Shown here: positions 9,302-64,000 of the stretch, piece after piece | How positions within the stretch are numbered: position 1 is the first letter of the stretch | Layout of the letters: each line of letters begins with the position of its first letter | Virus record (IMG/VR): IMGVR_UViG_3300046513_000348 | Location: 1-64,000 of that record | Strand: one strand, 5' to 3' | DNA length: 64,000 nt | Position numbers and translations under genes: made by a program | The notes under the pieces: generated by a model | Database searches by the model: none | What the model was told of the DNA's origin: nothing | The model's input: only the letters and a program-made list of their open reading frames with translations

Positions 9302-10612
9302 TTAAGCGTGTTGCAGGCGGTTGGCGTAGTAGAACATCTTGTTCGAGGCCATCTCTTCGAGGGCTTGTTCGAATTCGATCTGCTTACGCTTCTGTACGCC
9401 GGAGGGAATCAGGTAATCGTACACGAGCCCGACCAGCTGCGTATGATCCTTGTATTTTTCGTTGACCTTGTCGATCATCTCGATGTCGGCACGGATACGA
9501 GCCGAGCTTTCTTTCGAGGTAGCGGGGTTCTTCAGCTCTTCGATCAGCTGCATGCGAACACGTTTGAAACGCTGGCCGCCTTTATCGTACCAGTCGTGAT
9601 GCGAGTCCGCGAAGACGAACGACATCACCAGGCCGAAGGTGGTCCAGGCACCGAAGATGTTGCCGATCGACACTTCGAACACGCCCAGCAGAACCAGGGC
9701 GACCTTCACGAATTCCATGAAGAAGTAACCGGCCCAGCCACGACGATAGATCGTGCCCTTCATCAGCTTGTCCAGTGCGGTCACGAGATCGCGGCCGGCG
9801 CCGTGACGAGTTGCGAACTGGTCCGACAGTGCTTCGAAGCTGTTGATGTCGTAGCCCGGCGTGCCCGACTGACTGCGATTGAAACGGGCGATGTTCGAGA
9901 CGAACACGGTGTAGACGGTCGTGTTGTTCTTGGTCGAGAGACCTTGAGCATCGACGAAGGACAGATCCAGCAGATCGCTGGTTTCCTTGATGATGATCTC
10001 GCGTTTGCCGTGGTCTTCGGTACCGTCCAGCTGGCGCACCATGGTGGTCAGGATCTGGTTGGTCGTACGGAAGCGAACCATGAAGTCGAAGAACGTGTAG
10101 ACGTGGCCGACTTCATGCAGGATGACCGCCGAGATTTCAGCGCTGGTGTATTGGCGGCCGTCGAACAGCTTGTACAGCAGGCCCTTGTTGCCGTAGATCA
10201 TCGGAGCATTCAGCAGCATCTGGATCGGCGACAGTTCTGCGAAGTAGCCATGGACATACGACGCATTCGGATCCAGGAGACCACGGACTTCTTTGTCGCG
10301 ACTCTTACGAATGTCCGACAGGCTTTGTTTGGAAAGGGTCGATTCTTTCCAGCCGTAGCCTTCCATCAGCGGGCTGTTTTTGTCGATGTTCGGCGGTTCG
10401 GTCGACATCGGATAATCACCGATAACGATGTTGAAGTTGATGTTCGTGTAGTCCTTGATGCAATCGGCGATTGCGATCTCGAACTCGGTTTGGGTTTGGG
10501 CAGACCAGCTGCCGCGGTATTGGTCGATGATAGCCGTCAACGACGTATGAAACGAGTTGTTCTGAAAGCTGATGCTTTCGGGGCTATAGATCGGATTGAT
10601 GGTTCTGAGCAT
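9302..10612 (-). CDS. Virion-module protein with M48-like zinc metallopeptidase motif (phiKZ gp84-like)
   Basis: AVILHEVGH (HExxH), downstream EALSDQFA..HGAGRDLVTALDKL and a hydrophobic hairpin. Confidence 0.65.
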   Translation of the reverse strand: MLRTINPIYSPESISFQNNSFHTSLTAIIDQYRGSWSAQTQTEFEIAIADCIKDYTNINFNIVIGDYPMSTEPPNIDKNSPLMEGYGWKESTLSKQSLSDIRKSRDKEVRGLLDPNASYVHGYFAELSPIQMLLNAPMIYGNKGLLYKLFDGRQYTSAEISAVILHEVGHVYTFFDFMVRFRTTNQILTTMVRQLDGTEDHGKREIIIKETSDLLDLSFVDAQGLSTKNNTTVYTVFVSNIARFNRSQSGTPGYDINSFEALSDQFATRHGAGRDLVTALDKLMKGTIYRRGWAGYFFMEFVKVALVLLGVFEVSIGNIFGAWTTFGLVMSFVFADSHHDWYDKGGQRFKRVRMQLIEELKNPATSKESSARIRADIEMIDKVNEKYKDHTQLVGLVYDYLIPSGVQKRKQIEFEQALEEMASNKMFYYANRLQHA

Positions 10613-10710
10613 GATTGCGTCCGGCCTTTTGTCTACGGTAAATTAAAATCAGAGGACACAATTCTGTGCCCGAAAAAGTCCTATGCCTCATAAAAAAGGT
10701 GAGAAACGTC

Positions 10711-12813
10711 ATGTATCATATTCGACTACTCAACAAACGGAACAAGTCGGCTGTTTATCCAGATGACCTCCTGATTTTTGACATCGATCGGAGTTGTCCT
10801 TTAATGGGGAATCCTATCCCTTTGGAGGACAAGGACGACGACGACATGCGTGAAGCTGTCCTCATCGAATACCGAGAACACTTCGAAAAAGAATACGCCG
10901 GTAACCCGGCATTTAAACAACGAATCCATTACTTTGCAGACCTAGTTAAGAGTGGTAAGAAACTAGGCTTTAGTTGCTGGTGTCACCCGAAGCAGTGTCA
11001 CGGCAACGTCATCATCGAAAAGATCATCCAGTTAGTAAAGAAACCCATGGCCAAGTCTATTGAAGCAAAAGCGGTTCCAGAATTCCTCGAAGAACGTTTC
11101 AAGCCGGAAGAGATTGACTACGTCGAATGCCGCTTCGTCATTCACATGCCACGCAAGACCGGCGATACGCCGTTTAACGATCATGATTGGCACATGGTCA
11201 AGGAAGTCATCCATTTGAAGGATGGTCGTACTGTCCCGAACGTTCGTTACGTCAAGGACTACAAGCGGAAGTATTGGGTGACGGCACCCCGCTTCCGCAA
11301 GAGTTACGAACAGAAGCGCGAATGGGAAACCCTGGATCGCCTGATCGAAGGAGAGTCGACCCAATCGGATCTGTACAAGAACGTAGCGATTTCGCTAGGT
11401 CGAATGGATCTGATCAAGCAGCCTCACATGTTGAAGGACTCGCCGCATATTTACGGCCTGGACATTCCTTCCTCGGTCTCTCTCAAGTACGACTATGTCG
11501 AACGCATGAACGGTAAGAAGGATACGCCGTTCAGCATTGCCTATTCGGATACTGAGACCAACATGCTGGGTCTCGAGAATGGCGCATCGAAACACATCAT
11601 CATGCAGTCGCTCTTCTTCGAGGGTAAACTGTACACGGTGATTCTGAAAGACTTCCTGGCCATCGTTCCAAGGCCAGAAGAAACACTGCGTGAGCTCTAC
11701 GAAGAACACATGCCTGAGCAAGGCAAGGAACTGGTCAAGGAATGGGAGTTCGAATTTGTCGATCAACCAATTGACATCGTCAAACGCATTCTGAAACGTT
11801 GCCATACTTGGCAGCCAGATTTCCTGTCCTTCTGGAACATGATCTTCGACTTGGACAAGATGATCGAGTGTGTCGAAGAAGCCGGTTATCGTCCTGAAGA
11901 CATCTTCTGCGATCCTCGCCTGCCTAAAGATCTGCGTACTGCTTTCCTCAAACGCGCCAACCCGAACAAGACAAGTGCTTCCGGCCGTACCATGACCAAG
12001 AAGCCGGCCGATCAATGGCACAGCTGGCTCTGCCCTGCATCGTTTTACATCATCGACCAGATGGCGTCCTATCGCTTCATTCGTAAATCGAAGCAGCTGG
12101 AACCGTCTTATGGCCTGGATGAGATCCTGGGTAAGGAACTGGAAGGTCTGGGTAAGCTTAAGCACAAGCCAGCCGAAGGTTTGAACAAAGCCGAATTCCA
12201 CATCTTCATGCAGCAGAAGTATCCGGGCGAGTATGTGATTTATCACCTCTGGGATGCCGTCTGTATGCACAAGCTGACGCTGAAGACCCAGGACTTGAGC
12301 TACTCGCTTCCTGGTACTACCGAGTACTCGGACTTCGTCAGCTTTGAATCGGAACCGAAGCGCTACATCCACAAGTTCCACCATTACATCCTGAAGAACC
12401 ACAATGCAGTGACTGGCGTGTCGGGCAAGACGCTGGTTCAGGAACACGACGAGCTGACCATCAGTACCAAAGGCCACATCGTTACCCTTGAACCTCATCT
12501 AACGGTCGATACCGGCATGAAGATCTTCAAGGACTATCCGGGCCTGCAGACGAACTTCTATGGTCACAATGCCGACTTGGACGTGAAGTCCAGTTATCCA
12601 TATGGCCAATGGGTGTTCAATATGTCACGACAGACGACCGTTCGTGAACTGGTGGACATCGAAGGCGTACGTGATCACCAACGACGCATTCAAGGCCTCA
12701 ACATCTCTGGCGGGCGCAGCAACGCGGTCGAGTTCTGTACTGAGATCTTCAAAGTACCGACCTTGGCCAATCTGGGCGACATCTTCGACAAAGCAAAAGC
12801 TGCACAAAACTAA
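10711..12813 (+). CDS. Split family-B DNA polymerase, exonuclease/motif-A subunit (phiKZ gp82-like), with N-terminal DUF4326 domain
   Basis: ExoI SDTET, ExoII WNMIFD, ExoIII YHLWD, PolB motif A DLDVKSSYP; N-terminal GNP...CWCHPKQCHG; start moved to ATG 10711 behind AGGTGAG. Confidence 0.85.
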   Translation: MYHIRLLNKRNKSAVYPDDLLIFDIDRSCPLMGNPIPLEDKDDDDMREAVLIEYREHFEKEYAGNPAFKQRIHYFADLVKSGKKLGFSCWCHPKQCHGNVIIEKIIQLVKKPMAKSIEAKAVPEFLEERFKPEEIDYVECRFVIHMPRKTGDTPFNDHDWHMVKEVIHLKDGRTVPNVRYVKDYKRKYWVTAPRFRKSYEQKREWETLDRLIEGESTQSDLYKNVAISLGRMDLIKQPHMLKDSPHIYGLDIPSSVSLKYDYVERMNGKKDTPFSIAYSDTETNMLGLENGASKHIIMQSLFFEGKLYTVILKDFLAIVPRPEETLRELYEEHMPEQGKELVKEWEFEFVDQPIDIVKRILKRCHTWQPDFLSFWNMIFDLDKMIECVEEAGYRPEDIFCDPRLPKDLRTAFLKRANPNKTSASGRTMTKKPADQWHSWLCPASFYIIDQMASYRFIRKSKQLEPSYGLDEILGKELEGLGKLKHKPAEGLNKAEFHIFMQQKYPGEYVIYHLWDAVCMHKLTLKTQDLSYSLPGTTEYSDFVSFESEPKRYIHKFHHYILKNHNAVTGVSGKTLVQEHDELTISTKGHIVTLEPHLTVDTGMKIFKDYPGLQTNFYGHNADLDVKSSYPYGQWVFNMSRQTTVRELVDIEGVRDHQRRIQGLNISGGRSNAVEFCTEIFKVPTLANLGDIFDKAKAAQN

Positions 12814-12828
12814 TCAAAAGGAGCAAAC

Positions 12829-13167
12829 ATGGCTTACCACTACTATCGTGACGACTACAAGCCCGAGCCAGTCTTCATCAAGGACGACGAACTGGGCGAA
12901 GAGCGCTTCAAAGCGCTCGAGGAGCAGCTGAAACACTTCAAGCTGAGTCCTGAGCACACCCGAGCTCGCGACCGCACTGTGGCCGTTTTCTACTACCGCC
13001 TGGAGCTGGCCAAGCAAGCCCTGTTCCCACGTCAGTTCCCCGGTGCCCGTGAACGTCTCGAGAAGTTCCGTAAGCCGAAGTTCTTCCTCGATGCCATGAC
13101 GGATCTGGTCGAACAAGTCAAGAAGGCAGTACCGGCGCCGAAGGCCAAACGTCGTTCTAGCTGGTAA
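12829..13167 (+). CDS. Hypothetical protein
   Basis: 112 aa, AAGGAG RBS, followed by a terminator. Confidence 0.75.
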   Translation: MAYHYYRDDYKPEPVFIKDDELGEERFKALEEQLKHFKLSPEHTRARDRTVAVFYYRLELAKQALFPRQFPGARERLEKFRKPKFFLDAMTDLVEQVKKAVPAPKAKRRSSW

Positions 13168-13183
13168 AAAAGAAAGCATAAAG

Positions 13184-13896: not shown

Positions 13897-14592
13897 TTAA
13901 GCAGACCGCAGGGACGGCGAGGTCAGATGGTGCAGGCGGGCACGCACGAGCTTCTTCACGTATTCCAGATCGTTGTTCGCATCGATGACCATCAGCGGGT
14001 TCGCTTCGTGGTCACGGACATGATAACGCTGGTTGAAGCCTGACTGCAAACGAATGAAGAAAGCATCGTCAGCTTTCTCGAACGCATCCTTGGCAGCAGG
14101 ACGGCTCGAGACACGGGCGCGTGAGGTTTCCAGGCTCACGTCCAGATGGACAGTGTTGTAGCCATAGATCTGCTTCCGCAGGAAGACACGTTCATCGAAG
14201 GATAGGTCTGTGAAGAACGTTTCCAGATCGAACATGTACTGGAAGACATGACGCATGACTTCATAGGGGATGCCCATGCCGTAATGCTGATAGACCCAGG
14301 TCGTATCATGCCAGCGATCAGTGATCACTACCTTACCCTCGAGGAGAGCAGGGATAATCGTTTCCTTCATAACACGGGCACGCAGTTCGAGGATCAGGGA
14401 CAGAACAGCAACGTTCGGAACCTTCTGCTGAATCCACAGATCGCGTTTGAACATCGCGTCTTCATCTCGCGGATATGCTTCGACAACGACGTTAGGAACG
14501 CCATTCTCAGTCAGGTATTCGCCCATGTACTTGGCAGTAGTGGACTTCCCACTACCATCCAAGCCTTCTACACTAAACAGCATACTTTCCAT
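13897..14592 (-). CDS. tmk: Thymidylate kinase
   Basis: P-loop VEGLDGSGKST, VITDRW and YQ motifs. Confidence 0.9.
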   Translation of the reverse strand: MESMLFSVEGLDGSGKSTTAKYMGEYLTENGVPNVVVEAYPRDEDAMFKRDLWIQQKVPNVAVLSLILELRARVMKETIIPALLEGKVVITDRWHDTTWVYQHYGMGIPYEVMRHVFQYMFDLETFFTDLSFDERVFLRKQIYGYNTVHLDVSLETSRARVSSRPAAKDAFEKADDAFFIRLQSGFNQRYHVRDHEANPLMVIDANNDLEYVKKLVRARLHHLTSPSLRSA

Positions 14593-43901: not shown

Positions 43902-45341
43902 TTAAAAACCGAACCCGCGACCGCCGCCACCACCAGCAATATCGCTAGGCAGGAACTCGTCGAAGAGATCGTTGAAGTCACGTCCCATCTTGCGAACGTC
44001 ATCGAGCGAGTCGGTAACGATCGGAGATGCAAGTGCATTGGTAAACACAGGGATAACGAACCGGCCTTGGTTCTTGCCATCCCAGAACATCGTGAAGTCC
44101 ACCTCGCCGAATGCACGGCAAGTTACGTTCAGGCCGACATCGAAGTCGTTACCCGCGGTGATCGGCATCAGGAGCTCATCGATGATGCGATCTTCGAACA
44201 TGTCCAGGAACGGACCCAGCTCCATATCCTTCACGAACGAACGAGCGTTGGACGGAGTGAACGCCCACTTGTGACCGAGTTCCTGGTTGTGCACCTGGAA
44301 GCTGATCTGGTGGATACCGCATTCCATCATCAGTGCCGGGACGGCGATACCGACGAGGGCTGCGATGCGGTCTTCTTCTTCCTGGCCGTCGAGACGGTTG
44401 TACTCGTCGTAACGCGTAATGGCCTTTGCGTCATTGTCCAGCAGCAGCGGATTGGTACGACGCTCTGCATCCGGATCGATCTTCAGCAGGTCGTCGAAGG
44501 TGAAGTTATCCACCGTCACGTTCTTGCCTCGGATGTTCGAGATCTGGCGCAGGAAGATGTCGTCCGATGCATACGACTCTTGCACATAGCCTTGTGCGGT
44601 TGCGTTGATGTCTGCAACTGCATTGCCGTAGTCCGAATTCTCCAAGGCCTTTTGACGGCTATTGAGAACGCTGGCCATGAAGCGCGAGCCCAGGCGGTTG
44701 GAAGTGCTGGACTTGATGGCGTTCTTCGACAGCGTAGTACGCAGATCGGTAACGTCATCGACGAGTTCCATGGTCTGCTCGGAGTCGAGCGACGAGAACA
44801 CGTCTTCAGGACGCATCGTGAACAGACGATCATGGCGACGACGCAGGCCTGCGTTTTCGCGATCCGACAGAACGTCAGCGGTGTGGCTCGGAACGTACAC
44901 ACGCTCGTAACGACCGCTGCGGGTCTTTACGGTTTTCTCGGTGAGCATGAAGGTCGAGTTGACGTAGAACTCCATGTCATGATCGACGTGACGAGTCGTG
45001 AAGCCCACCGAATTGGTGTAGCCCATGATGACTTGCTTCAGGCGATCGCCGGTGCCGACTTCGATCATCAGCGTCAGGATGAAGCGGCCGCGACGGGTAC
45101 CCCAGCCATGCGGGATGTCGATGATGCCACGGGTCTCGTAGTCAGGAACGATGAATTGGTTTGCGATGTTCGCCAGGATGGAAGGAGTGAAACGACGGGA
45201 TTTCGCAAAGCGTTCCTCAATGCGATCAATCACGCCGCCTTTGACTTCGGTAACGTAGGGACGAAGGAACTGATCGGAGTACGTGCCCGATTCGATGATG
45301 TTCAGTTCTTCAACCCAGATTTTCAAGTCTTGCCTTTTCAT
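43902..45341 (-). CDS. picA: Phage-nucleus protein importer PicA/Imp1-like (phiKZ gp69)
   Basis: 479 aa; synteny chmC - sigma-like - picA - gp70 - beta; no diagnostic motif checked. Confidence 0.65.
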   Translation of the reverse strand: MKRQDLKIWVEELNIIESGTYSDQFLRPYVTEVKGGVIDRIEERFAKSRRFTPSILANIANQFIVPDYETRGIIDIPHGWGTRRGRFILTLMIEVGTGDRLKQVIMGYTNSVGFTTRHVDHDMEFYVNSTFMLTEKTVKTRSGRYERVYVPSHTADVLSDRENAGLRRRHDRLFTMRPEDVFSSLDSEQTMELVDDVTDLRTTLSKNAIKSSTSNRLGSRFMASVLNSRQKALENSDYGNAVADINATAQGYVQESYASDDIFLRQISNIRGKNVTVDNFTFDDLLKIDPDAERRTNPLLLDNDAKAITRYDEYNRLDGQEEEDRIAALVGIAVPALMMECGIHQISFQVHNQELGHKWAFTPSNARSFVKDMELGPFLDMFEDRIIDELLMPITAGNDFDVGLNVTCRAFGEVDFTMFWDGKNQGRFVIPVFTNALASPIVTDSLDDVRKMGRDFNDLFDEFLPSDIAGGGGGRGFGF

Positions 45342-56359: not shown

Positions 56360-58327
56360 TTACCAGCGGCCGCCGAAACGCTCGTCCGAGCGGTCCGAGT
56401 AGCGATCGTCGTAACGGTCGCGACCTTGACGCTGGTTGCGGTACAGGCCGCCCGAACCAGGACGGTTCAGGATCTGGTCGATGTTGCCGTAGGTGGTACG
56501 GAAACGATCGTTGCCATCGCGGCTCGACGAGGTCGGGTTGAGCGACAGCTTGCAGCGGGTGATGGCTTCCAGCAGGGCCTCGTTGAAGCCGAGGGTGAAG
56601 TTGAAGCGCTGGTGGTAGCCGGTGATCACCGAGGTCGGCACGAAGTCCTTGATGATTTCGTAGCGTTCCGATTGGGTCAGGACGTTGTCTTCGTTCGAAG
56701 TCGCAGCCATGCCCCAACGCTGGATGATCTCCAGGTCTTCTTCCTTTTCCGGGCGCAGGAAGTTCAGCAGCGCCAGGTAGTCGAAGTCACGCAGGTCCAG
56801 ACGCTGGCCGCCCGATGCCTCGGTGTAGTAGCCGGCGTGGATACGCTCGATGTGCGGATCGATGATGGCTTCCGAACGATCGTACAGGTCTTCAAAGTGG
56901 CCATTGGTCAGCACGCAGGCCGCATCGTAGATACGACGCATTGCGCTTTCATTGCCCTGCGCAGCTGCCAGCAGGTCGATGTGCTGCCAGGTGCTGGCGC
57001 CGCATTCCGGAACGTCGATCGAGAAGATGATGCCCGGACGGACGGTTGCACGCAGCAGTGCTTGACGCTTGGCCGTGGTGAACGACGAGGTTTTGGTTTC
57101 CCAGCGTTCGCCGAAGCCACGTTCCATGTCCTGCAGGTTCGGCTCGATTGCCAACGCACCGATGTTGCGCGGATCGTCTTCACCCAGGGACTGGTTCGGC
57201 TCGAAGGCACGCATCACTTCCTGCGACTCGCCCATGGCGTTCATGGTCGCCATCGCCAGCAGCATGGTCGTCGGCGAGAAGTCGACGGTGTCCACGAAGG
57301 TGGTGATGAAGCGCAGCGCGTACAGCTGATACTCTTCGCCCGAGATGCGGCGATCGCGGCGGCTGTACAGGTCGTTGCGGTTGTTGGCGCCTTCGGCCGG
57401 CGCGTAGACGAAGTCGAAGTAGCCACCCAGGCGCGAGATGCGGGTGCCGGTCACCAGCTGGTCGATCGAGTCGCGGCTGTTGCGGCCCTTGGCTTCGCGG
57501 GACTGCAGATCCACGATCACGTCGGCACGGGTCGGCATGTGGCCGCGGTCGAAGATGTGGTTCTGGCGATGCTGGACGTGCACGCTGTTGTAGGTGTCGA
57601 CGTTGTCGTCGGCGCTCAGCACCAGTGCGATCGCGTCCGGATCGTTGCGGTCGATGAAGGTCTTGATCGCGGCGAATGCGTTCTTGACGCAGTCGGCGAT
57701 TGCCTGCGGGTCTTCCTTGGCGGTCGGGAAACCTTCCGAGATGACTTCAGCGTCGGCCGAGAACAGGTTCTTGTTGCCGTAGTGGCGTTCCAGAACGTCC
57801 TTGATGACCTGACGGGTCTTGTTGTTGTAACCATCGCCCGGGACCTGGACGATGAACACGCGCTGGCCGCGATAGCTTTCTTCACGCGGACGCAGGGTCT
57901 CGGCCGAACCGGCGAGCAGGAAGGTGTGGTAGCCCACGCCCAGGTGCTCTTTGCCGCGGCGGGTGCCGGCGACGACCAGCAGCGAGAACGGGATACCGGC
58001 CGACGAGGCGTCGATCGGGAACACGCTCACGTTCAGCATGTTGTTGTCGTCTTTTGCCGGCATTGCTTCGACGAAGTCGCGGCGGAACGATTCCAGCGCT
58101 TCGGCGGTGTTGCTCATCGCCAGCGGCGTCGGGTTGGCACGGCCGATGCTCGACAGGGATGCGAAGCGGGACGGTGCATTGGTTTCGCTGCGACGCGATT
58201 CTTCACGGCGGCTGCCGCGATCTTCTTGTTGACCGCCACGATCGGTGTTGCCACCGGATTGACGCTCTTGCGCTTCTTTCATTGCCGAGCGAACTTGGGA
58301 TTGACGGTCTTGACCTTCGATTGCCAT
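56360..58327 (-). CDS. chmA: Chimallin, major phage nuclear shell protein (phiKZ gp54-like)
   Basis: 655 aa with disordered termini; very strong codon bias; early promoter; position between the gp52-like gene and beta'-N. Confidence 0.85.
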   Translation of the reverse strand: MAIEGQDRQSQVRSAMKEAQERQSGGNTDRGGQQEDRGSRREESRRSETNAPSRFASLSSIGRANPTPLAMSNTAEALESFRRDFVEAMPAKDDNNMLNVSVFPIDASSAGIPFSLLVVAGTRRGKEHLGVGYHTFLLAGSAETLRPREESYRGQRVFIVQVPGDGYNNKTRQVIKDVLERHYGNKNLFSADAEVISEGFPTAKEDPQAIADCVKNAFAAIKTFIDRNDPDAIALVLSADDNVDTYNSVHVQHRQNHIFDRGHMPTRADVIVDLQSREAKGRNSRDSIDQLVTGTRISRLGGYFDFVYAPAEGANNRNDLYSRRDRRISGEEYQLYALRFITTFVDTVDFSPTTMLLAMATMNAMGESQEVMRAFEPNQSLGEDDPRNIGALAIEPNLQDMERGFGERWETKTSSFTTAKRQALLRATVRPGIIFSIDVPECGASTWQHIDLLAAAQGNESAMRRIYDAACVLTNGHFEDLYDRSEAIIDPHIERIHAGYYTEASGGQRLDLRDFDYLALLNFLRPEKEEDLEIIQRWGMAATSNEDNVLTQSERYEIIKDFVPTSVITGYHQRFNFTLGFNEALLEAITRCKLSLNPTSSSRDGNDRFRTTYGNIDQILNRPGSGGLYRNQRQGRDRYDDRYSDRSDERFGGRW

Positions 58328-61912: not shown

Positions 61913-64000
61913 TTAATACAAGTCGTAAATCATTCGTGTATTTTTCTTATTGGCCATACCAACGCCCATTGCTTCTAGGATGTGGTAATAGGCACCGCAG
62001 GATTCGCGAACGATCTTGCGTGCATTCGAACCAGCCAGTATCTCGTCAGGGATACCGGAGATTTGAACGATGCTCACTGGAACGTAAAGAGTCGTAAGGA
62101 TCTTGCGACCAATCCTTTCCATTTCGGTTTTGATGTCTTCAACAAGACGTTGGTCCTTGATCTGTTCGAGCCAAGTCGCAAACTCAGTCACGTTGTTAAC
62201 TTCAAGCGAAACCTTCAGCATGGTGTAAGGAGGCTCATCAACCATTCCGTAGACTTTGCCGAATGTACGATTCCAGAACAGATGGTTCCAGTACGGGGTA
62301 CGATCCTCGTCCTGAACCTTGTAGGCCTTTGCAGGCTTCAAGTGAGCCATCTTGAAGTACTCGGTCTTGCCGGATTTCACATCGCTGTAGATTCCGTTTT
62401 CCTTCTCGGCGATGGTGTCGATCAGATCGTTCAGGTAGATATCCTTCCCGGCCACTATGTCTTTCATCTGGTCGAGCAGGAACTTCTTCACATTCTTCAC
62501 GATATCACCAGGCGTAGCTGAGGAGATCATGTTCGCACCCTTCAGTTCCAGTTCCGGCTTCTTAAAGACGTTACCTTCCTGAGCAGATTTCATTGCCCAG
62601 TAGTGCTTTGCCATCAAGGTTGGGACGAAGATGTCGAACTTGTACTCGTTCTTCATCTGCACGTCGAACAGACGATCGCGATGGACGCCATAGTTCGCGC
62701 TCATCTTGGCATGCAGGTGCGAGGAGGTCTGTGCTGCGAGATAAACTACAACGTCAGACGTCGAGTTCATTTCGTCAGTGAAACCAATCGTACCGTAAAT
62801 GCGCTGAACCCATTCCTGTACGGTGAACAGAGTCGAGTCAGTATCGCCACCCAGCACGGAACGACGGACCGAGGTCGGGAAGTTACCGGTGGATGCTGGC
62901 ATGTTGTCGCTGAGCCAGAATGCATTGATGATCGGCTGTACGCCAACGAGGACGTCGTTGATGTTCTTGGCCACATGCGCCAGAATGCCGTAGTTGCGTT
63001 CGTCGGTCTTGCGAATCTCTTTCGGCTTCATGCCTTTCGAGAAAGAACGGCACAGCTGACGAGCCAGATTGAGCGTATCTTCCGAAACAGCTTTCAGAAC
63101 GAAGTCGGCTTCTTCAACTGGTAGGGATTCACTCGGAATCCAAATCAGACGACCAAGCAGATCCGAAACGAATTGCTTGTTGTGCTTGTACAGATGGTAG
63201 AAATCACCAACGTACACAAATGCCGCACGTTCCAGCGGAGACATCTTCGAGATGAACTCGTACACCGGACCCATCATCTTGTTCGACTGGAAGTACAGCT
63301 GCCTGGACCGCTCGATACATTCCAATACTTCGTCGGATGTCGGATAAGCCAGGCCGTAGATCCGCATTGCGGTTTCGACCTTTTCCATGTCGGTGATTTG
63401 CGAGATCGACACCAGGTTGTTCAGGATGGTATCGACGTCCATGTAATGGCGATTGCCTTCGATGAACTTCTCGTTGTTGGCGTTACCGTACGCCGTGGTA
63501 TTGCGGCAGTTCGTCGTGAGGGACGAGTGCGAGGTCGGATTGAACAGGCAGGTCGACGGAGTCAGCGATGCGCCCGACAGCGAGTTGTTGGTGGTCTTCT
63601 TGTTATTCTGTTCGAGGTTCTTAAAGATGTACAGAACATCGTCACCAGCATTCTTCGCATCGAACATCTGACCCTTACTAATGTCTCGGCCCACGATGTT
63701 GTCCATGGTGTACAGGGACAGAAGCGATTGTCGCACATCTGGCGAGCAGTAAGAGGTGAAGGTCGGTGACATGGATTCGTCGTTAGCGATCACGTCCGAC
63801 AGGTATTTCGACATCGTAGTTTCTTCGAGACGGCGGTCTTCGAAGTTGCTGCGATGCAGGAAGCGAACCTTCGGGTCATGGAATTCAAACAGACCACCCG
63901 GGCGTAGGTTTTGGATAACGAACTCGCGAGCTTCTTCCAGCGAGATGTTCTTGGTTTTGTGGAGATAGAAAGATGCCTGGTCAACGTAACCATTGAGCAT
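61913..64000 (-). CDS. Split family-B DNA polymerase, palm (motif B/C) subunit (phiKZ gp50-like); may extend beyond the window
   Basis: Motif B KKTTNNSLSG, motif C GGDTDS, and KHY...ELKG. Confidence 0.88.
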   Translation of the reverse strand: MLNGYVDQASFYLHKTKNISLEEAREFVIQNLRPGGLFEFHDPKVRFLHRSNFEDRRLEETTMSKYLSDVIANDESMSPTFTSYCSPDVRQSLLSLYTMDNIVGRDISKGQMFDAKNAGDDVLYIFKNLEQNNKKTTNNSLSGASLTPSTCLFNPTSHSSLTTNCRNTTAYGNANNEKFIEGNRHYMDVDTILNNLVSISQITDMEKVETAMRIYGLAYPTSDEVLECIERSRQLYFQSNKMMGPVYEFISKMSPLERAAFVYVGDFYHLYKHNKQFVSDLLGRLIWIPSESLPVEEADFVLKAVSEDTLNLARQLCRSFSKGMKPKEIRKTDERNYGILAHVAKNINDVLVGVQPIINAFWLSDNMPASTGNFPTSVRRSVLGGDTDSTLFTVQEWVQRIYGTIGFTDEMNSTSDVVVYLAAQTSSHLHAKMSANYGVHRDRLFDVQMKNEYKFDIFVPTLMAKHYWAMKSAQEGNVFKKPELELKGANMISSATPGDIVKNVKKFLLDQMKDIVAGKDIYLNDLIDTIAEKENGIYSDVKSGKTEYFKMAHLKPAKAYKVQDEDRTPYWNHLFWNRTFGKVYGMVDEPPYTMLKVSLEVNNVTEFATWLEQIKDQRLVEDIKTEMERIGRKILTTLYVPVSIVQISGIPDEILAGSNARKIVRESCGAYYHILEAMGVGMANKKNTRMIYDLY

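What the first reader, a model, noticed from the sequence alone, without database searches (positions are those of the whole stretch)
10711..11100. DUF4326 domain fused in frame to a DNA polymerase subunit
Seen: a ~110-aa DUF4326 (GNP...LGFSCWCHPKQCHGNV) runs without a stop into the PolB exonuclease subunit; the junction ATG at 11047 has no clear RBS. Known: DUF4326 usually stands alone in phages, often near NADAR and other ADP-ribose-processing genes. Inference: the polymerase carries a module that may recognise or remove DNA adducts, such as DarT-type ADP-ribosylation, at the replication fork inside the phage nucleus.
Basis: partly seen in the sequence, partly recalled or inferred. Interest (0 to 1): 0.65.

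Follow-up and report, generated by a model that had tools for sequence, protein, structure and literature searches.

The report
DUF4326 enzyme domain fused to phage polymerase
A small, probably cysteine-dependent phosphatase-like domain of unknown function is fused to the proofreading half of the split DNA polymerase of a nucleus-forming jumbo phage. The same fusion is conserved in a whole clade of already sequenced relatives, so it is a useful clue to the domain's job, not a new kind of system.

Summary
Window 10711-12813 (+) is one 700-aa ORF. Residues 1-110 are a Pfam DUF4326 domain (E 4e-10). A disordered linker of about 9 aa follows. The rest is the N-terminal/3'-5' exonuclease half of a split family-B polymerase (phiKZ gp82 type; Foldseek RB69 gp43, E 2e-13).

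The fusion is not an artefact:
- At least 27 homologues have no stop at the junction.
- An independent metagenome contig spans it without indels.
- dN/dS of the domain is 0.11-0.24.
- All family-invariant residues are kept.
- The first ATG has an invariant Shine-Dalgarno.

The junction ATG (11047) is the ancestral polymerase start codon and is invariant. It has no SD in this window, but it does in most relatives. The domain was gained once and lost at least twice, so it is accessory.

Its model most resembles RapZ-C and Cys-phosphatases (Z about 6, weak). That points to phosphoester chemistry on DNA ends or sugar-phosphate groups, not DarT-adduct glycohydrolysis. The phage has no NADAR or Macro domain.

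Other chimalliviruses carry a stand-alone sister protein instead (DUF488-N3a, phiKZ gp151). The architecture already exists in GenBank (RSL2, FLC6), mostly mis-started. Function remains inferred.

The parts
10696..10703 (+). Shine-Dalgarno (AAGGTGAG) of the fused gene, 7-9 nt before the ATG
   Evidence: Read from the sequence. AAAAAAGG(T/A)G is conserved in 13 of 13 related genomes. Anti-SD pairing is -4.6 kcal/mol.
10711..12813 (+). Whole fused gene, 700 aa: DUF4326, linker, then PolB N-terminal/exonuclease half
   Evidence: The AF2 model has mean pLDDT 84.
10711..11040 (+). DUF4326 domain (aa 1-110): b1 4-8, b2 20-24, a1 44-64, a2 66-80, b3 84-89, a3 98-110
   Evidence: Pfam E 4e-10. AF2 pLDDT 94.6 with a 78-sequence alignment. 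dN/dS 0.11-0.24. Best structural match is the RapZ C-terminal domain at Z 6.0, followed by Cys-phosphatases.
10975..11001 (+). Predicted active-site loop C89-W-C91-H-P-K-Q-C96-H97, between strand b3 and helix a3
   Evidence: C89, C91, C96 and H97 are invariant in 78 family members, as are N34 and R47. Position in the model.
11041..11067 (+). Flexible linker (aa 111-119)
   Evidence: pLDDT below 50. Sequence and length vary among relatives, from about 10 to about 45 aa.
11047..11049 (+). Junction ATG (Met113): the ancestral start codon of the polymerase piece
   Evidence: Invariant in all 13 DNA-level relatives and in at least 90% of 51 homologues. It aligns with the start Met of the unfused relatives P0025 and P0038. 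No SD in this window; SD-like sequence in about 8-9 of 13 relatives.
11068..12429 (+). PolB N-terminal and 3'-5' exonuclease domains (aa 120-573): ExoI YSDTETN 278-284, ExoII FWNMIFDLDKM 374-384, ExoIII YHLWD 511-515
   Evidence: Foldseek RB69 gp43 at E 1.9e-13 over about 455 columns. D280, E282, Y511 and D515 are invariant, and N376 and D380 are kept in at least 90%, in 51 homologues. Orthologue of phiKZ gp82 / 201phi2-1 gp144.
12430..12810 (+). C-terminal segment (aa 574-700) with a motif-A-like DLDVKSSYP (aa 622-630, nt 12574-12600). Low confidence when folded alone.
   Evidence: pLDDT 35-57 over aa 574-672. D622, D624, Y629 and P630 are at least 90% conserved. Inference: it folds only against the second polymerase subunit.
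61913..64000 (-). Context: second polymerase piece (phrog_2927 'DNA polymerase'). It runs off the window; the full ORF reaches genome position 64054 (713 aa).
   Evidence: S13 is annotated with two DNA polymerase genes, gp3 and gp194 (PMC11898562).
56360..58327 (-). Context: chimallin (nuclear shell protein), which marks the phage as nucleus-forming
   Evidence: phrog_4795, E 3e-157.

Best explanation
**Shown.** This is a genuine, translated gene fusion in a Chiangmaivirus-like, nucleus-forming jumbo phage from a rhizosphere metagenome.
- A complete DUF4326 domain sits in front of the phiKZ-gp82-type N-terminal/3'-5' exonuclease half of the split family-B replicative polymerase. A disordered linker of variable length joins the two.
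- The domain belongs to the RapZ-C/DUF488/DUF4326 group, with a conserved Cys/His loop between a strand and a helix.
- The domain was captured once, upstream of the old polymerase start codon, which survives as the invariant Met113.
- It has kept every family-invariant residue under purifying selection.
- It was lost again in at least two lineages. It is therefore an accessory activity and is not needed for polymerisation.

**Inferred.** The domain is a cysteine-dependent phosphoesterase or phosphotransferase.
- It acts on a phosphate-linked sugar or nucleotide group. Candidates are a blocked DNA 3' end (3'-phosphate or phospho-ribosyl/ADP-ribose-derived remnants) or a related nucleotide.
- Fusion to a polymerase subunit would deliver it to the primer terminus.
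- Fusion would also carry it through the selective protein shell of the phage nucleus, where host end-cleaning enzymes are absent.

**How likely.** The fusion itself is about 0.95 certain. The biochemical role is about 0.35-0.4.
For: **Fusion is real**
- Uninterrupted ORF.
- PF14216 is precomputed on nearly all homologues of at least 57% identity.
- 13 of 13 genomes share the start and its SD.
- An independent contig has no indels.
- dN/dS of the domain is 0.11-0.24, against 0.06-0.17 for the polymerase part.

**Domain looks intact**
- N34, R47, C89, C91, C96 and H97 are invariant across 78 family members.
- The model has pLDDT 94.6.

**Fold**
- Best match in 48,161 chains is the RapZ C-terminal domain (Z 6.0, rmsd 3.5, 95 aa), followed by dozens of dual-specificity, PTEN and RNA 5'-phosphatases.
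- There is a weak Pfam cross-hit to DUF488-N3a.
- Published classification: rhodanese-phosphatase superfamily, predicted to process ribose-linked terminal phosphates and seen fused to replication components (PMC9503650; PMC7824862).

**Polymerase half**
- RB69 gp43 at E 2e-13; exonuclease motifs invariant; second piece identified.

**Accessory**
- The tree needs one gain and at least two losses.
- Unfused relatives have only 74-133 nt upstream.

**DNA-metabolism link**
- Relatives are fused to UvrD helicase, HD, NADAR and SLOG domains.
- The stand-alone sister protein of other chimalliviruses lies two genes from the UvsX-like recombinase.
Against: - No biochemical activity is known for any DUF4326 protein.
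- The fold matches have middling scores: Z below 8, and Foldseek found nothing significant.
- CxC-x4-CH could equally be a metal site.
- No docking of the domain on the polymerase could be shown. The linker is disordered, so proximity to the primer end is an assumption.
- Nuclear import by hitch-hiking is pure inference.
- Two natural losses show that the phage lineage can do without the domain.
Confidence: 0.4

Rival explanations
1. The domain recognises or removes base-linked ADP-ribose placed on ssDNA by DarT-type toxins, and so clears the template for the polymerase.
For: - Close DUF4326 relatives are fused to NADAR and cpYpsA-SLOG domains.
- The phage and RSL2 encode a YAcAr-SLOG protein.
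- Literature links DUF4326 to NAD/ADPr systems.
Against: - The model resembles Cys-phosphatases and RapZ-C, not macrodomain or NADAR glycohydrolases.
- The genome has no NADAR or Macro domain.
- The published prediction concerns terminal phosphates of ADPr, not N-glycosidic base adducts.
- No DarT context was examined in hosts.
Confidence: 0.15
2. The domain is not an enzyme. It is a small ligand- or metal-binding module (CxC-x4-CH as a Zn site, or a sugar-phosphate/nucleotide sensor like RapZ-C) that tunes polymerase or exonuclease activity or binds DNA.
For: - The best structural match, RapZ-C, is a sugar-phosphate/RNA-binding domain.
- Three Cys and one His are invariant.
- It co-occurs with SLOG sensor-type domains.
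Against: - N34 and R47, away from the Cys cluster, are also invariant, as expected for a substrate pocket.
- Pfam labels the sister family the 'active' DUF488-N3 subclade.
- The Cys loop lies between a strand and a helix, which is the catalytic position in Cys-phosphatases (established knowledge).
Confidence: 0.15
3. The domain works on free nucleotides (pool sanitation, or making or removing a modified precursor). It is only co-localised with the replisome.
For: - The stand-alone DUF4326 of Ralstonia phage RP13 lies directly after nrdA/nrdB.
- PHROG members are labelled 'NrdA-like'.
- One relative is an HD-domain fusion.
- A thymidylate kinase lies about 1 kb downstream on the opposite strand (13897-14592).
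Against: - Covalent attachment to the exonuclease/N-terminal half of the polymerase is not needed for a pool enzyme.
- Fusions to UvrD helicase point to DNA as the substrate.
Confidence: 0.12
4. The fused protein is not the main, or not the only, product. Translation also starts at the junction ATG and gives a polymerase-only isoform. In the extreme version, only that isoform is made.
For: - Met113 is invariant within a variable linker, and it is the ancestral start.
- In about 8-9 of 13 relatives an SD-like sequence stronger than at least 95% of other ATGs in the gene precedes it.
- The RsoM3USA annotators start the gene there.
Against: - This window has no SD at the junction (-0.9 kcal/mol).
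- The domain is under purifying selection and never separated by a stop, so the long form must be made.
- No stand-alone stop or restart arrangement was found in any relative.
Confidence: 0.25

Closest known systems
Chiangmaivirus polymerase pieces: Ralstonia phage RSL2 ORF179, RSF1, RsoM3USA, Burkholderia phages FLC6 gp197, FLC8 and S13 gp194
   Same: - Identical architecture (DUF4326, linker, PolB N-terminal/exonuclease half).
- Same synteny, same start context and same invariant junction Met.
- About 72% aa identity overall and 57-64% in the domain.
   Different: - A different species, from a rhizosphere metagenome.
- GenBank annotations hide the fusion. RSL2 and S13 start at an internal Met, RsoM3USA starts at the junction Met, and FLC6 is labelled 'hypothetical'.
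phiKZ gp82 / 201phi2-1 gp144 / EL gp51 (exonuclease-bearing polymerase piece of other chimalliviruses)
   Same: - Orthologous N-terminal, exonuclease and motif-A-like region (30-38% identity).
- Same neighbourhood next to gp84/gp85-like virion genes.
   Different: - No DUF4326. These proteins begin near the position of Met113-130.
Stand-alone and SLOG/NADAR-fused DUF4326 proteins (e.g. N4 gp12, RP13 ORF161; Iyer et al. 2021, 2022)
   Same: - Same Pfam family.
- Same invariant residues: N, R and CxC..CH.
   Different: - Those are mostly 105-140-aa single-domain proteins, or are fused to NADAR, cpYpsA-SLOG, UvrD or HD domains. Here the partner is a replicative polymerase subunit.
phiKZ gp151 / 201phi2-1 gp235 type proteins (Pfam DUF488-N3a), stand-alone in most chimalliviruses
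   Same: - Sister family: hhalign probability 90.6%, E 1.3e-6.
- Same GC.C....CH loop.
- Same virus family, and located near DNA recombination genes.
   Different: - A different Pfam family, with motif CHRH, and never fused.
- No PF22751 hit was found in the window's genome. In RSL2 the only hit is a sub-threshold cross-match to the fused DUF4326 domain itself.
RapZ C-terminal domain and dual-specificity/PTEN-type cysteine phosphatases
   Same: - Best structural matches: Z 6.0 down to 4, with 85-95 aligned residues.
- A Cys-bearing loop between a strand and a helix.
   Different: - No sequence similarity (4-15% identity).
- No CX5R arginine; the loop reads C-x5-H instead.
- The scores are too low to prove homology.
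Uracil-DNA-glycosylase-PolA fusion of phage PaBG and relatives
   Same: - Same design principle: a DNA-repair-type enzyme domain fused to the N-terminus of a jumbo-phage replicative polymerase (PMC7412058).
   Different: - Unrelated domains (UDG versus DUF4326; family A versus split family B polymerase).

Membership tests
Pfam DUF4326 (PF14216) | HMM score above the curated gathering threshold | tested here: met
   40.7 bits (44.8 for the domain alone) against a cut-off of 25. 44.5 bits in the six-frame search.
Pfam DUF4326 (PF14216) | Family-invariant residues (GN motif, Arg, CxC...CH loop) present | tested here: met
   N34, R47, C89, C91, C96 and H97 are invariant in a 78-sequence alignment that includes 67 stand-alone members.
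Rhodanese-phosphatase superfamily (RapZ-C/DUF488/DUF4326 clade, Burroughs and Aravind 2023; cited from memory, paper not held) | Rossmannoid fold with a catalytic Cys loop between a strand and the following helix | tested here: inconclusive
   The topology fits. The top VIA matches are RapZ-C and Cys-phosphatases at Z 4-6. Z is below 8, however, and Foldseek found no match with E at or below 0.001. hhalign to DUF488-N3a gives 90.6% probability.
Rhodanese-phosphatase superfamily | Cys-dependent phosphate, thio or related transfer activity | not testable with these tools
   Needs enzymology.
Family B DNA polymerase, N-terminal/3'-5' exonuclease half | Exo I (DxE), Exo II (Nx3FD) and Exo III (Yx3D) motifs, and an RB69/T4-like fold | tested here: met
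   D280, E282, Y511 and D515 are invariant, and N376 and D380 are kept in at least 90%, in 51 homologues. Foldseek RB69 gp43 at E 1.9e-13. PF03104 is present on distant homologues.
Family B DNA polymerase, complete enzyme | Polymerase motifs B and C (fingers and palm) in the same polypeptide; Pfam PF00136 | tested here: not met
   No PF00136 or PF03104 hit in this genome. The protein ends about 75 aa after a motif-A-like DLDVKSSYP. The rest is the separate phrog_2927 gene.
Chimalliviridae (nucleus-forming jumbo phages) | Chimallin shell protein and split multisubunit RNA polymerases | tested here: met
   phrog_4795 at E 3e-157, and four RNAP beta-type pieces in the window. Nearest genomes are Chiangmaivirus.
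DNA ADP-ribosyl-glycohydrolases (DarG macrodomain, NADAR) | Macro or NADAR domain | tested here: not met
   No PF01661 or PF08719 match in the protein or anywhere in the genome.

The most novel reading that the evidence does not exclude
The fusion may be a Rosetta stone for a replisome-associated activity common to nucleus-forming phages. Most chimalliviruses carry a stand-alone enzyme of the RapZ-C/DUF488/DUF4326 clade (phiKZ gp151 type, near the UvsX-like recombinase). The Chiangmaivirus-like clade instead has a DUF4326 welded to the polymerase, together with a SLOG protein. On this reading, both would perform the same so far undescribed DNA-end or ADP-ribose-phosphate processing step inside the phage nucleus. 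That step would be either repair chemistry that replaces excluded host enzymes or a counter-defence against DNA-targeting NAD-dependent toxins.
Probability: 0.2. Interest if true: 0.75.

Novelty: new member of a known kind. Interest (0 to 1): 0.42.

Why it matters
- DUF4326 and its sister DUF488 families have thousands of members in phages, giant viruses and bacteria, and no assayed activity.
- A stable, selected fusion to the proofreading half of a replicative polymerase is strong guilt-by-association evidence that the substrate is DNA, or something at the primer terminus.
- Several relatives are cultivable (RSL2, RSF1, FLC6, S13), so this can be tested.
- The finding points to phiKZ gp151-type proteins as candidate replisome or repair factors of the phage nucleus.
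- It shows that several GenBank entries mis-start this gene.
- The architecture is already in public databases, and fusions of DUF4326 to 'DNA replication components' were noted in 2021. The finding is therefore incremental.

Tried and rejected
- **Word search with the domain alone**: no candidates. The exhaustive profile search was used instead.
- **PDB sequence search**: only an acyl carrier protein (9ls6, E 1.7e-4 over aa 18-84). I take this as a chance, compositional match. The predicted fold and conserved residues do not fit an ACP, and it misses the Cys loop.
- **Foldseek of the domain against PDB**: nothing at E 0.001 or better.
- **Pfam PolB families on the genome**: no hits. Polymerase identity had to come from the fold and from distant homologues.
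- **Regex hunt for the second polymerase half**: it gave a false lead, window 43905-45341 (P0017), which does not look like a polymerase. The real piece was found by PHROG scan.
- **Complex prediction**, domain (1-110) against polymerase (120-575): no verdict, score 0.17 against a mark of 0.32. This is no evidence either way.
- **Unfused relatives**: searching their contigs for a stand-alone copy failed because the records are not held. Whether P0025, P0034 and P0038 phages carry the domain elsewhere is unknown.
- **Burroughs and Aravind 2023** (NAR Genom Bioinform lqad029): could not be read. It is cited from memory and through.
- **The search for related loci** in viral contigs: returned only RSL2 and RSF1.
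Full report
**1. What is in the sequence**

Window 10711-12813 (+) is a single 700-codon ORF.
- Residues 25-103 match Pfam DUF4326 (PF14216) at E 3.9e-10, above the curated cut-off.
- A six-frame search finds this as the only DUF4326 in the 218,660-bp virus genome, at 10783-11019.
- From about residue 129 the protein matches PHROG 3011 'DNA polymerase' at E 1e-192.
- The ATG at 10711 is preceded by AAGGTGAG (10696-10703).
- The ATG at 11047 (Met113) has only A-rich sequence in front of it.

**2. What the phage is**

- The nearest genomes are the Chiangmaivirus jumbo phages of Ralstonia and Burkholderia (RSL2, RSF1, RsoM3USA, FLC4/6/8, S13). They are about 79% identical at the DNA level and about 72% at the protein level for this gene.
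- The window also carries chimallin (56360-58327, -), several split RNA-polymerase beta pieces, and a second 'DNA polymerase' gene (phrog_2927; 61913 to beyond the window end, 713 aa).
- It is therefore a nucleus-forming chimallivirus with a two-piece family-B polymerase. This agrees with the two polymerase genes annotated in S13 (PMC11898562) and with Iyer et al. 2021 (PMC7824862).
- The source is a rhizosphere metagenome.

**3. The polymerase part**

Pfam's PolB models do not hit this genome. Other evidence identifies the protein.
- An AF2 model built on 51 homologues (mean pLDDT 84) matches RB69 gp43 and Pol epsilon at E about 1e-13 over about 455 columns.
- The exonuclease residues D280 and E282 (Exo I) and Y511 and D515 (Exo III) are invariant in all 51 homologues, and N376 and D380 (Exo II) are kept in at least 90%.
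- Distant homologues carry PF03104.
- The protein is the orthologue of phiKZ gp82 / 201phi2-1 gp144.
- Residues 574-672 include a conserved motif-A-like DLDVKSSYP and fold poorly alone. By inference, they need the second subunit.

'PolB exonuclease subunit' is a fair description.

**4. Is the fusion real?**

- All 11 GenBank relatives have the same uninterrupted frame from the same start.
- So do nine metagenomic homologues first found with the domain.
- In a search with the polymerase part, every homologue above about 57% identity carries PF14216 except four.
- In 13 genomes with DNA in hand, the first ATG is always preceded by AAAAAAGG(T/A)G.
- Pairwise dN/dS of the domain is 0.11-0.24, against 0.06-0.17 for the polymerase part.
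- A 20-kb contig from an independent rhizosphere study spans 10400-11500 with 84 substitutions and no indel.

Sequencing error and a split gene are both excluded.

Annotators disagree on the start:
- RSL2 and S13 start at an internal Met.
- RsoM3USA starts at the junction Met.
- The window's own gene call starts at Met32.
- Residues 5-30 are highly conserved, so Met1 is the start.

**5. History of the fusion**

- Three complete relatives lack the domain (P0025, P0034, P0038). A fourth, P0037, is a fragment.
- Their loci have the same divergent 436-aa upstream gene and only 74-133 nt of spacer, so there is no room for a domain.
- The start Met of P0025 and P0038 aligns with Met113. The junction ATG is therefore the ancestral start codon.
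- On a tree of the polymerase part, the 31-member clade is strongly supported. P0034 is basal, while P0038 and P0025 are nested among fused members. This needs one gain and at least two losses.
- The fused N-domains form one group among 67 stand-alone relatives, with weak support of 59.
- Other chimalliviruses align only from about residue 98-170 onward.

The domain is a clade-specific, dispensable accessory.

**6. The junction Met**

- It is invariant in every fused sequence, although the linker around it varies in sequence and in length (about 10-45 aa).
- In about 8-9 of 13 genomes it is preceded by an SD-like sequence stronger than at least 95% of other ATGs in the gene.
- In this window, L009 and L013 it is not; the window value is -0.9 kcal/mol.
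- A short polymerase-only isoform is therefore plausible in many relatives. In this phage it is unsupported but not excluded.

**7. The domain itself**

- An exhaustive profile search finds 2,794 cluster representatives. Most are 105-140-aa stand-alone proteins.
- Multidomain relatives carry NADAR, cpYpsA-SLOG, UvrD helicase or HD domains.
- N34, R47, C89, C91, C96 and H97 are invariant in a 78-sequence alignment, and all are present here.
- The AF2 model (pLDDT 94.6) is a three-stranded, three-helix unit. The CWCHPKQCH loop lies between strand 3 and helix 3.
- Foldseek finds nothing significant in the PDB.
- The all-against-all VIA search puts the RapZ C-terminal domain first (Z 6.0, rmsd 3.5, 95 residues). 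A long run of dual-specificity, PTEN-type and RNA 5'-phosphatases and tetrapyrrole-type methylases follows at Z 4-5.5.
- These scores are individually weak. The list nevertheless coincides with the 'rhodanese-phosphatase superfamily' into which the Aravind group placed DUF4326 (PMC9503650; Burroughs and Aravind 2023, not readable here).
- That group predicted processing of ribose-linked terminal phosphates. It also noted fusions to 'DNA replication or R-M components' (PMC7824862).

**8. Mechanism**

Shown:
- An intact accessory enzyme-like domain is tethered to the proofreading half of the replicase of a nucleus-forming phage.

Inferred:
- It performs Cys-dependent phosphoester chemistry on a DNA end or on a sugar-phosphate or nucleotide group at the fork.
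- Fusion provides both targeting to the primer terminus and entry into the phage nucleus.

I put this at about 0.4.

The DarT-adduct idea gets about 0.15. Relatives do associate with NADAR and SLOG, and this genome and RSL2 have a YAcAr-SLOG gene next to the UvsX-like recombinase. Against it, the fold is not that of a known ADP-ribosyl-glycohydrolase, and the genome lacks NADAR and Macro.

A non-catalytic metal or ligand module, and a nucleotide-pool role, remain open. For the second, the stand-alone DUF4326 of RP13 follows nrdAB.

**9. Wider context noticed**

- PA7 (phiKZ-like), 201phi2-1 and Ea35-70 encode a stand-alone 115-131-aa protein of Pfam DUF488-N3a (phiKZ gp151 / 201phi2-1 gp235). 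It lies two genes from the UvsX-like gene.
- tblastn finds it in 289 phage records, 205 of them with at least 80% coverage. These cover most Pseudomonas, Erwinia, Salmonella, Serratia and Escherichia chimalliviruses. Ralstonia is not among the ten most frequent genus names listed.
- No stand-alone copy was found in this genome or in RSL2.
- It is homologous to DUF4326 in its catalytic half (hhalign 90.6%).
- The apparently complementary distribution suggests a shared role, but it was not tested genome by genome.

**10. Novelty and verdict**

The architecture has been in GenBank since RSL2, although it is mis-annotated. Public databases tag it with PF14216, and the class of fusion has been mentioned in the literature. 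I found no paper that describes this particular polymerase fusion.

It is a new member of a known kind and of moderate interest. Its value is as a handle on the function of DUF4326/DUF488-type proteins and on replication and repair inside the phage nucleus.

Noticed in passing
L023:1357-1704 (+) (phage PA7), L024:1336-1728 (+) (Ea35-70), L025:1471-1815 (-) (201phi2-1 gp235 = phiKZ gp151 homologue): Most chimalliviruses encode a stand-alone 115-131-aa DUF488-N3a protein (PF22751, E 2e-9) with a GCYCRxGxFCHRH loop. It is a sister family of DUF4326 and lies two genes from the UvsX-like recombinase. tblastn finds it in 289 phage records. No stand-alone copy was found in the window's genome or in RSL2. 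The distribution looks complementary to the polymerase fusion.
   Followed up: partly
Outside the window: genome G000:C1 about 114664-115140 (-) (L028:946-1422), next to the UvsX-like gene at about 115231-116652 (-): A 159-aa YAcAr/YspA SLOG-family protein (PF10686, E 2.5e-7) lies directly downstream of the recombinase gene. It is also present in RSL2, is sub-threshold in Ea35-70, and is absent from PA7 and 201phi2-1. SLOG domains are the commonest fusion partners of DUF4326 elsewhere.
   Followed up: partly
window 10711-10806; L002, L003, L004: Start-codon annotations of this gene disagree in public records. RSL2 and S13 start at an internal MKD. RsoM3USA starts at the junction Met, with a spurious antisense ORF over the domain. 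The window's own gene call (669 aa) starts at Met32. All of these cut into or remove the DUF4326 domain.
   Followed up: yes
window 10630-10703: The intergenic region upstream of the gene is strongly conserved among relatives that differ at most synonymous sites (…AATTAAAAATCAGA.GACACAAT…GTCCTA.GCCTCATAAAAAAGG…). It probably holds a phage promoter or 5'-UTR element as well as the SD.
   Followed up: no
window 12430-12810 and 61913-64000 (-): The last ~125 residues of the protein (with the conserved DLDVKSSYP) are predicted disordered when the protein is folded alone. The second polymerase piece (phrog_2927) lies 49 kb away and runs 54 nt past the window end. The subunit interface was not modelled.
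   Followed up: partly
window 12829-13167 (+) / 12814-13179 (-): Overlapping 112-aa and 121-aa ORFs lie on opposite strands directly after the polymerase gene. Some relatives (L012, L013) have a small + strand gene here, while others go straight to the SPRY/lectin-like and thymidylate kinase genes. Which strand is coding was not resolved.
   Followed up: no
L015, L016, L017: Three natural relatives have the polymerase piece without DUF4326. One of them (P0025, 70% identical) is nested among fused lineages. They would serve as ready-made deletion controls if such phages were isolated.
   Followed up: yes
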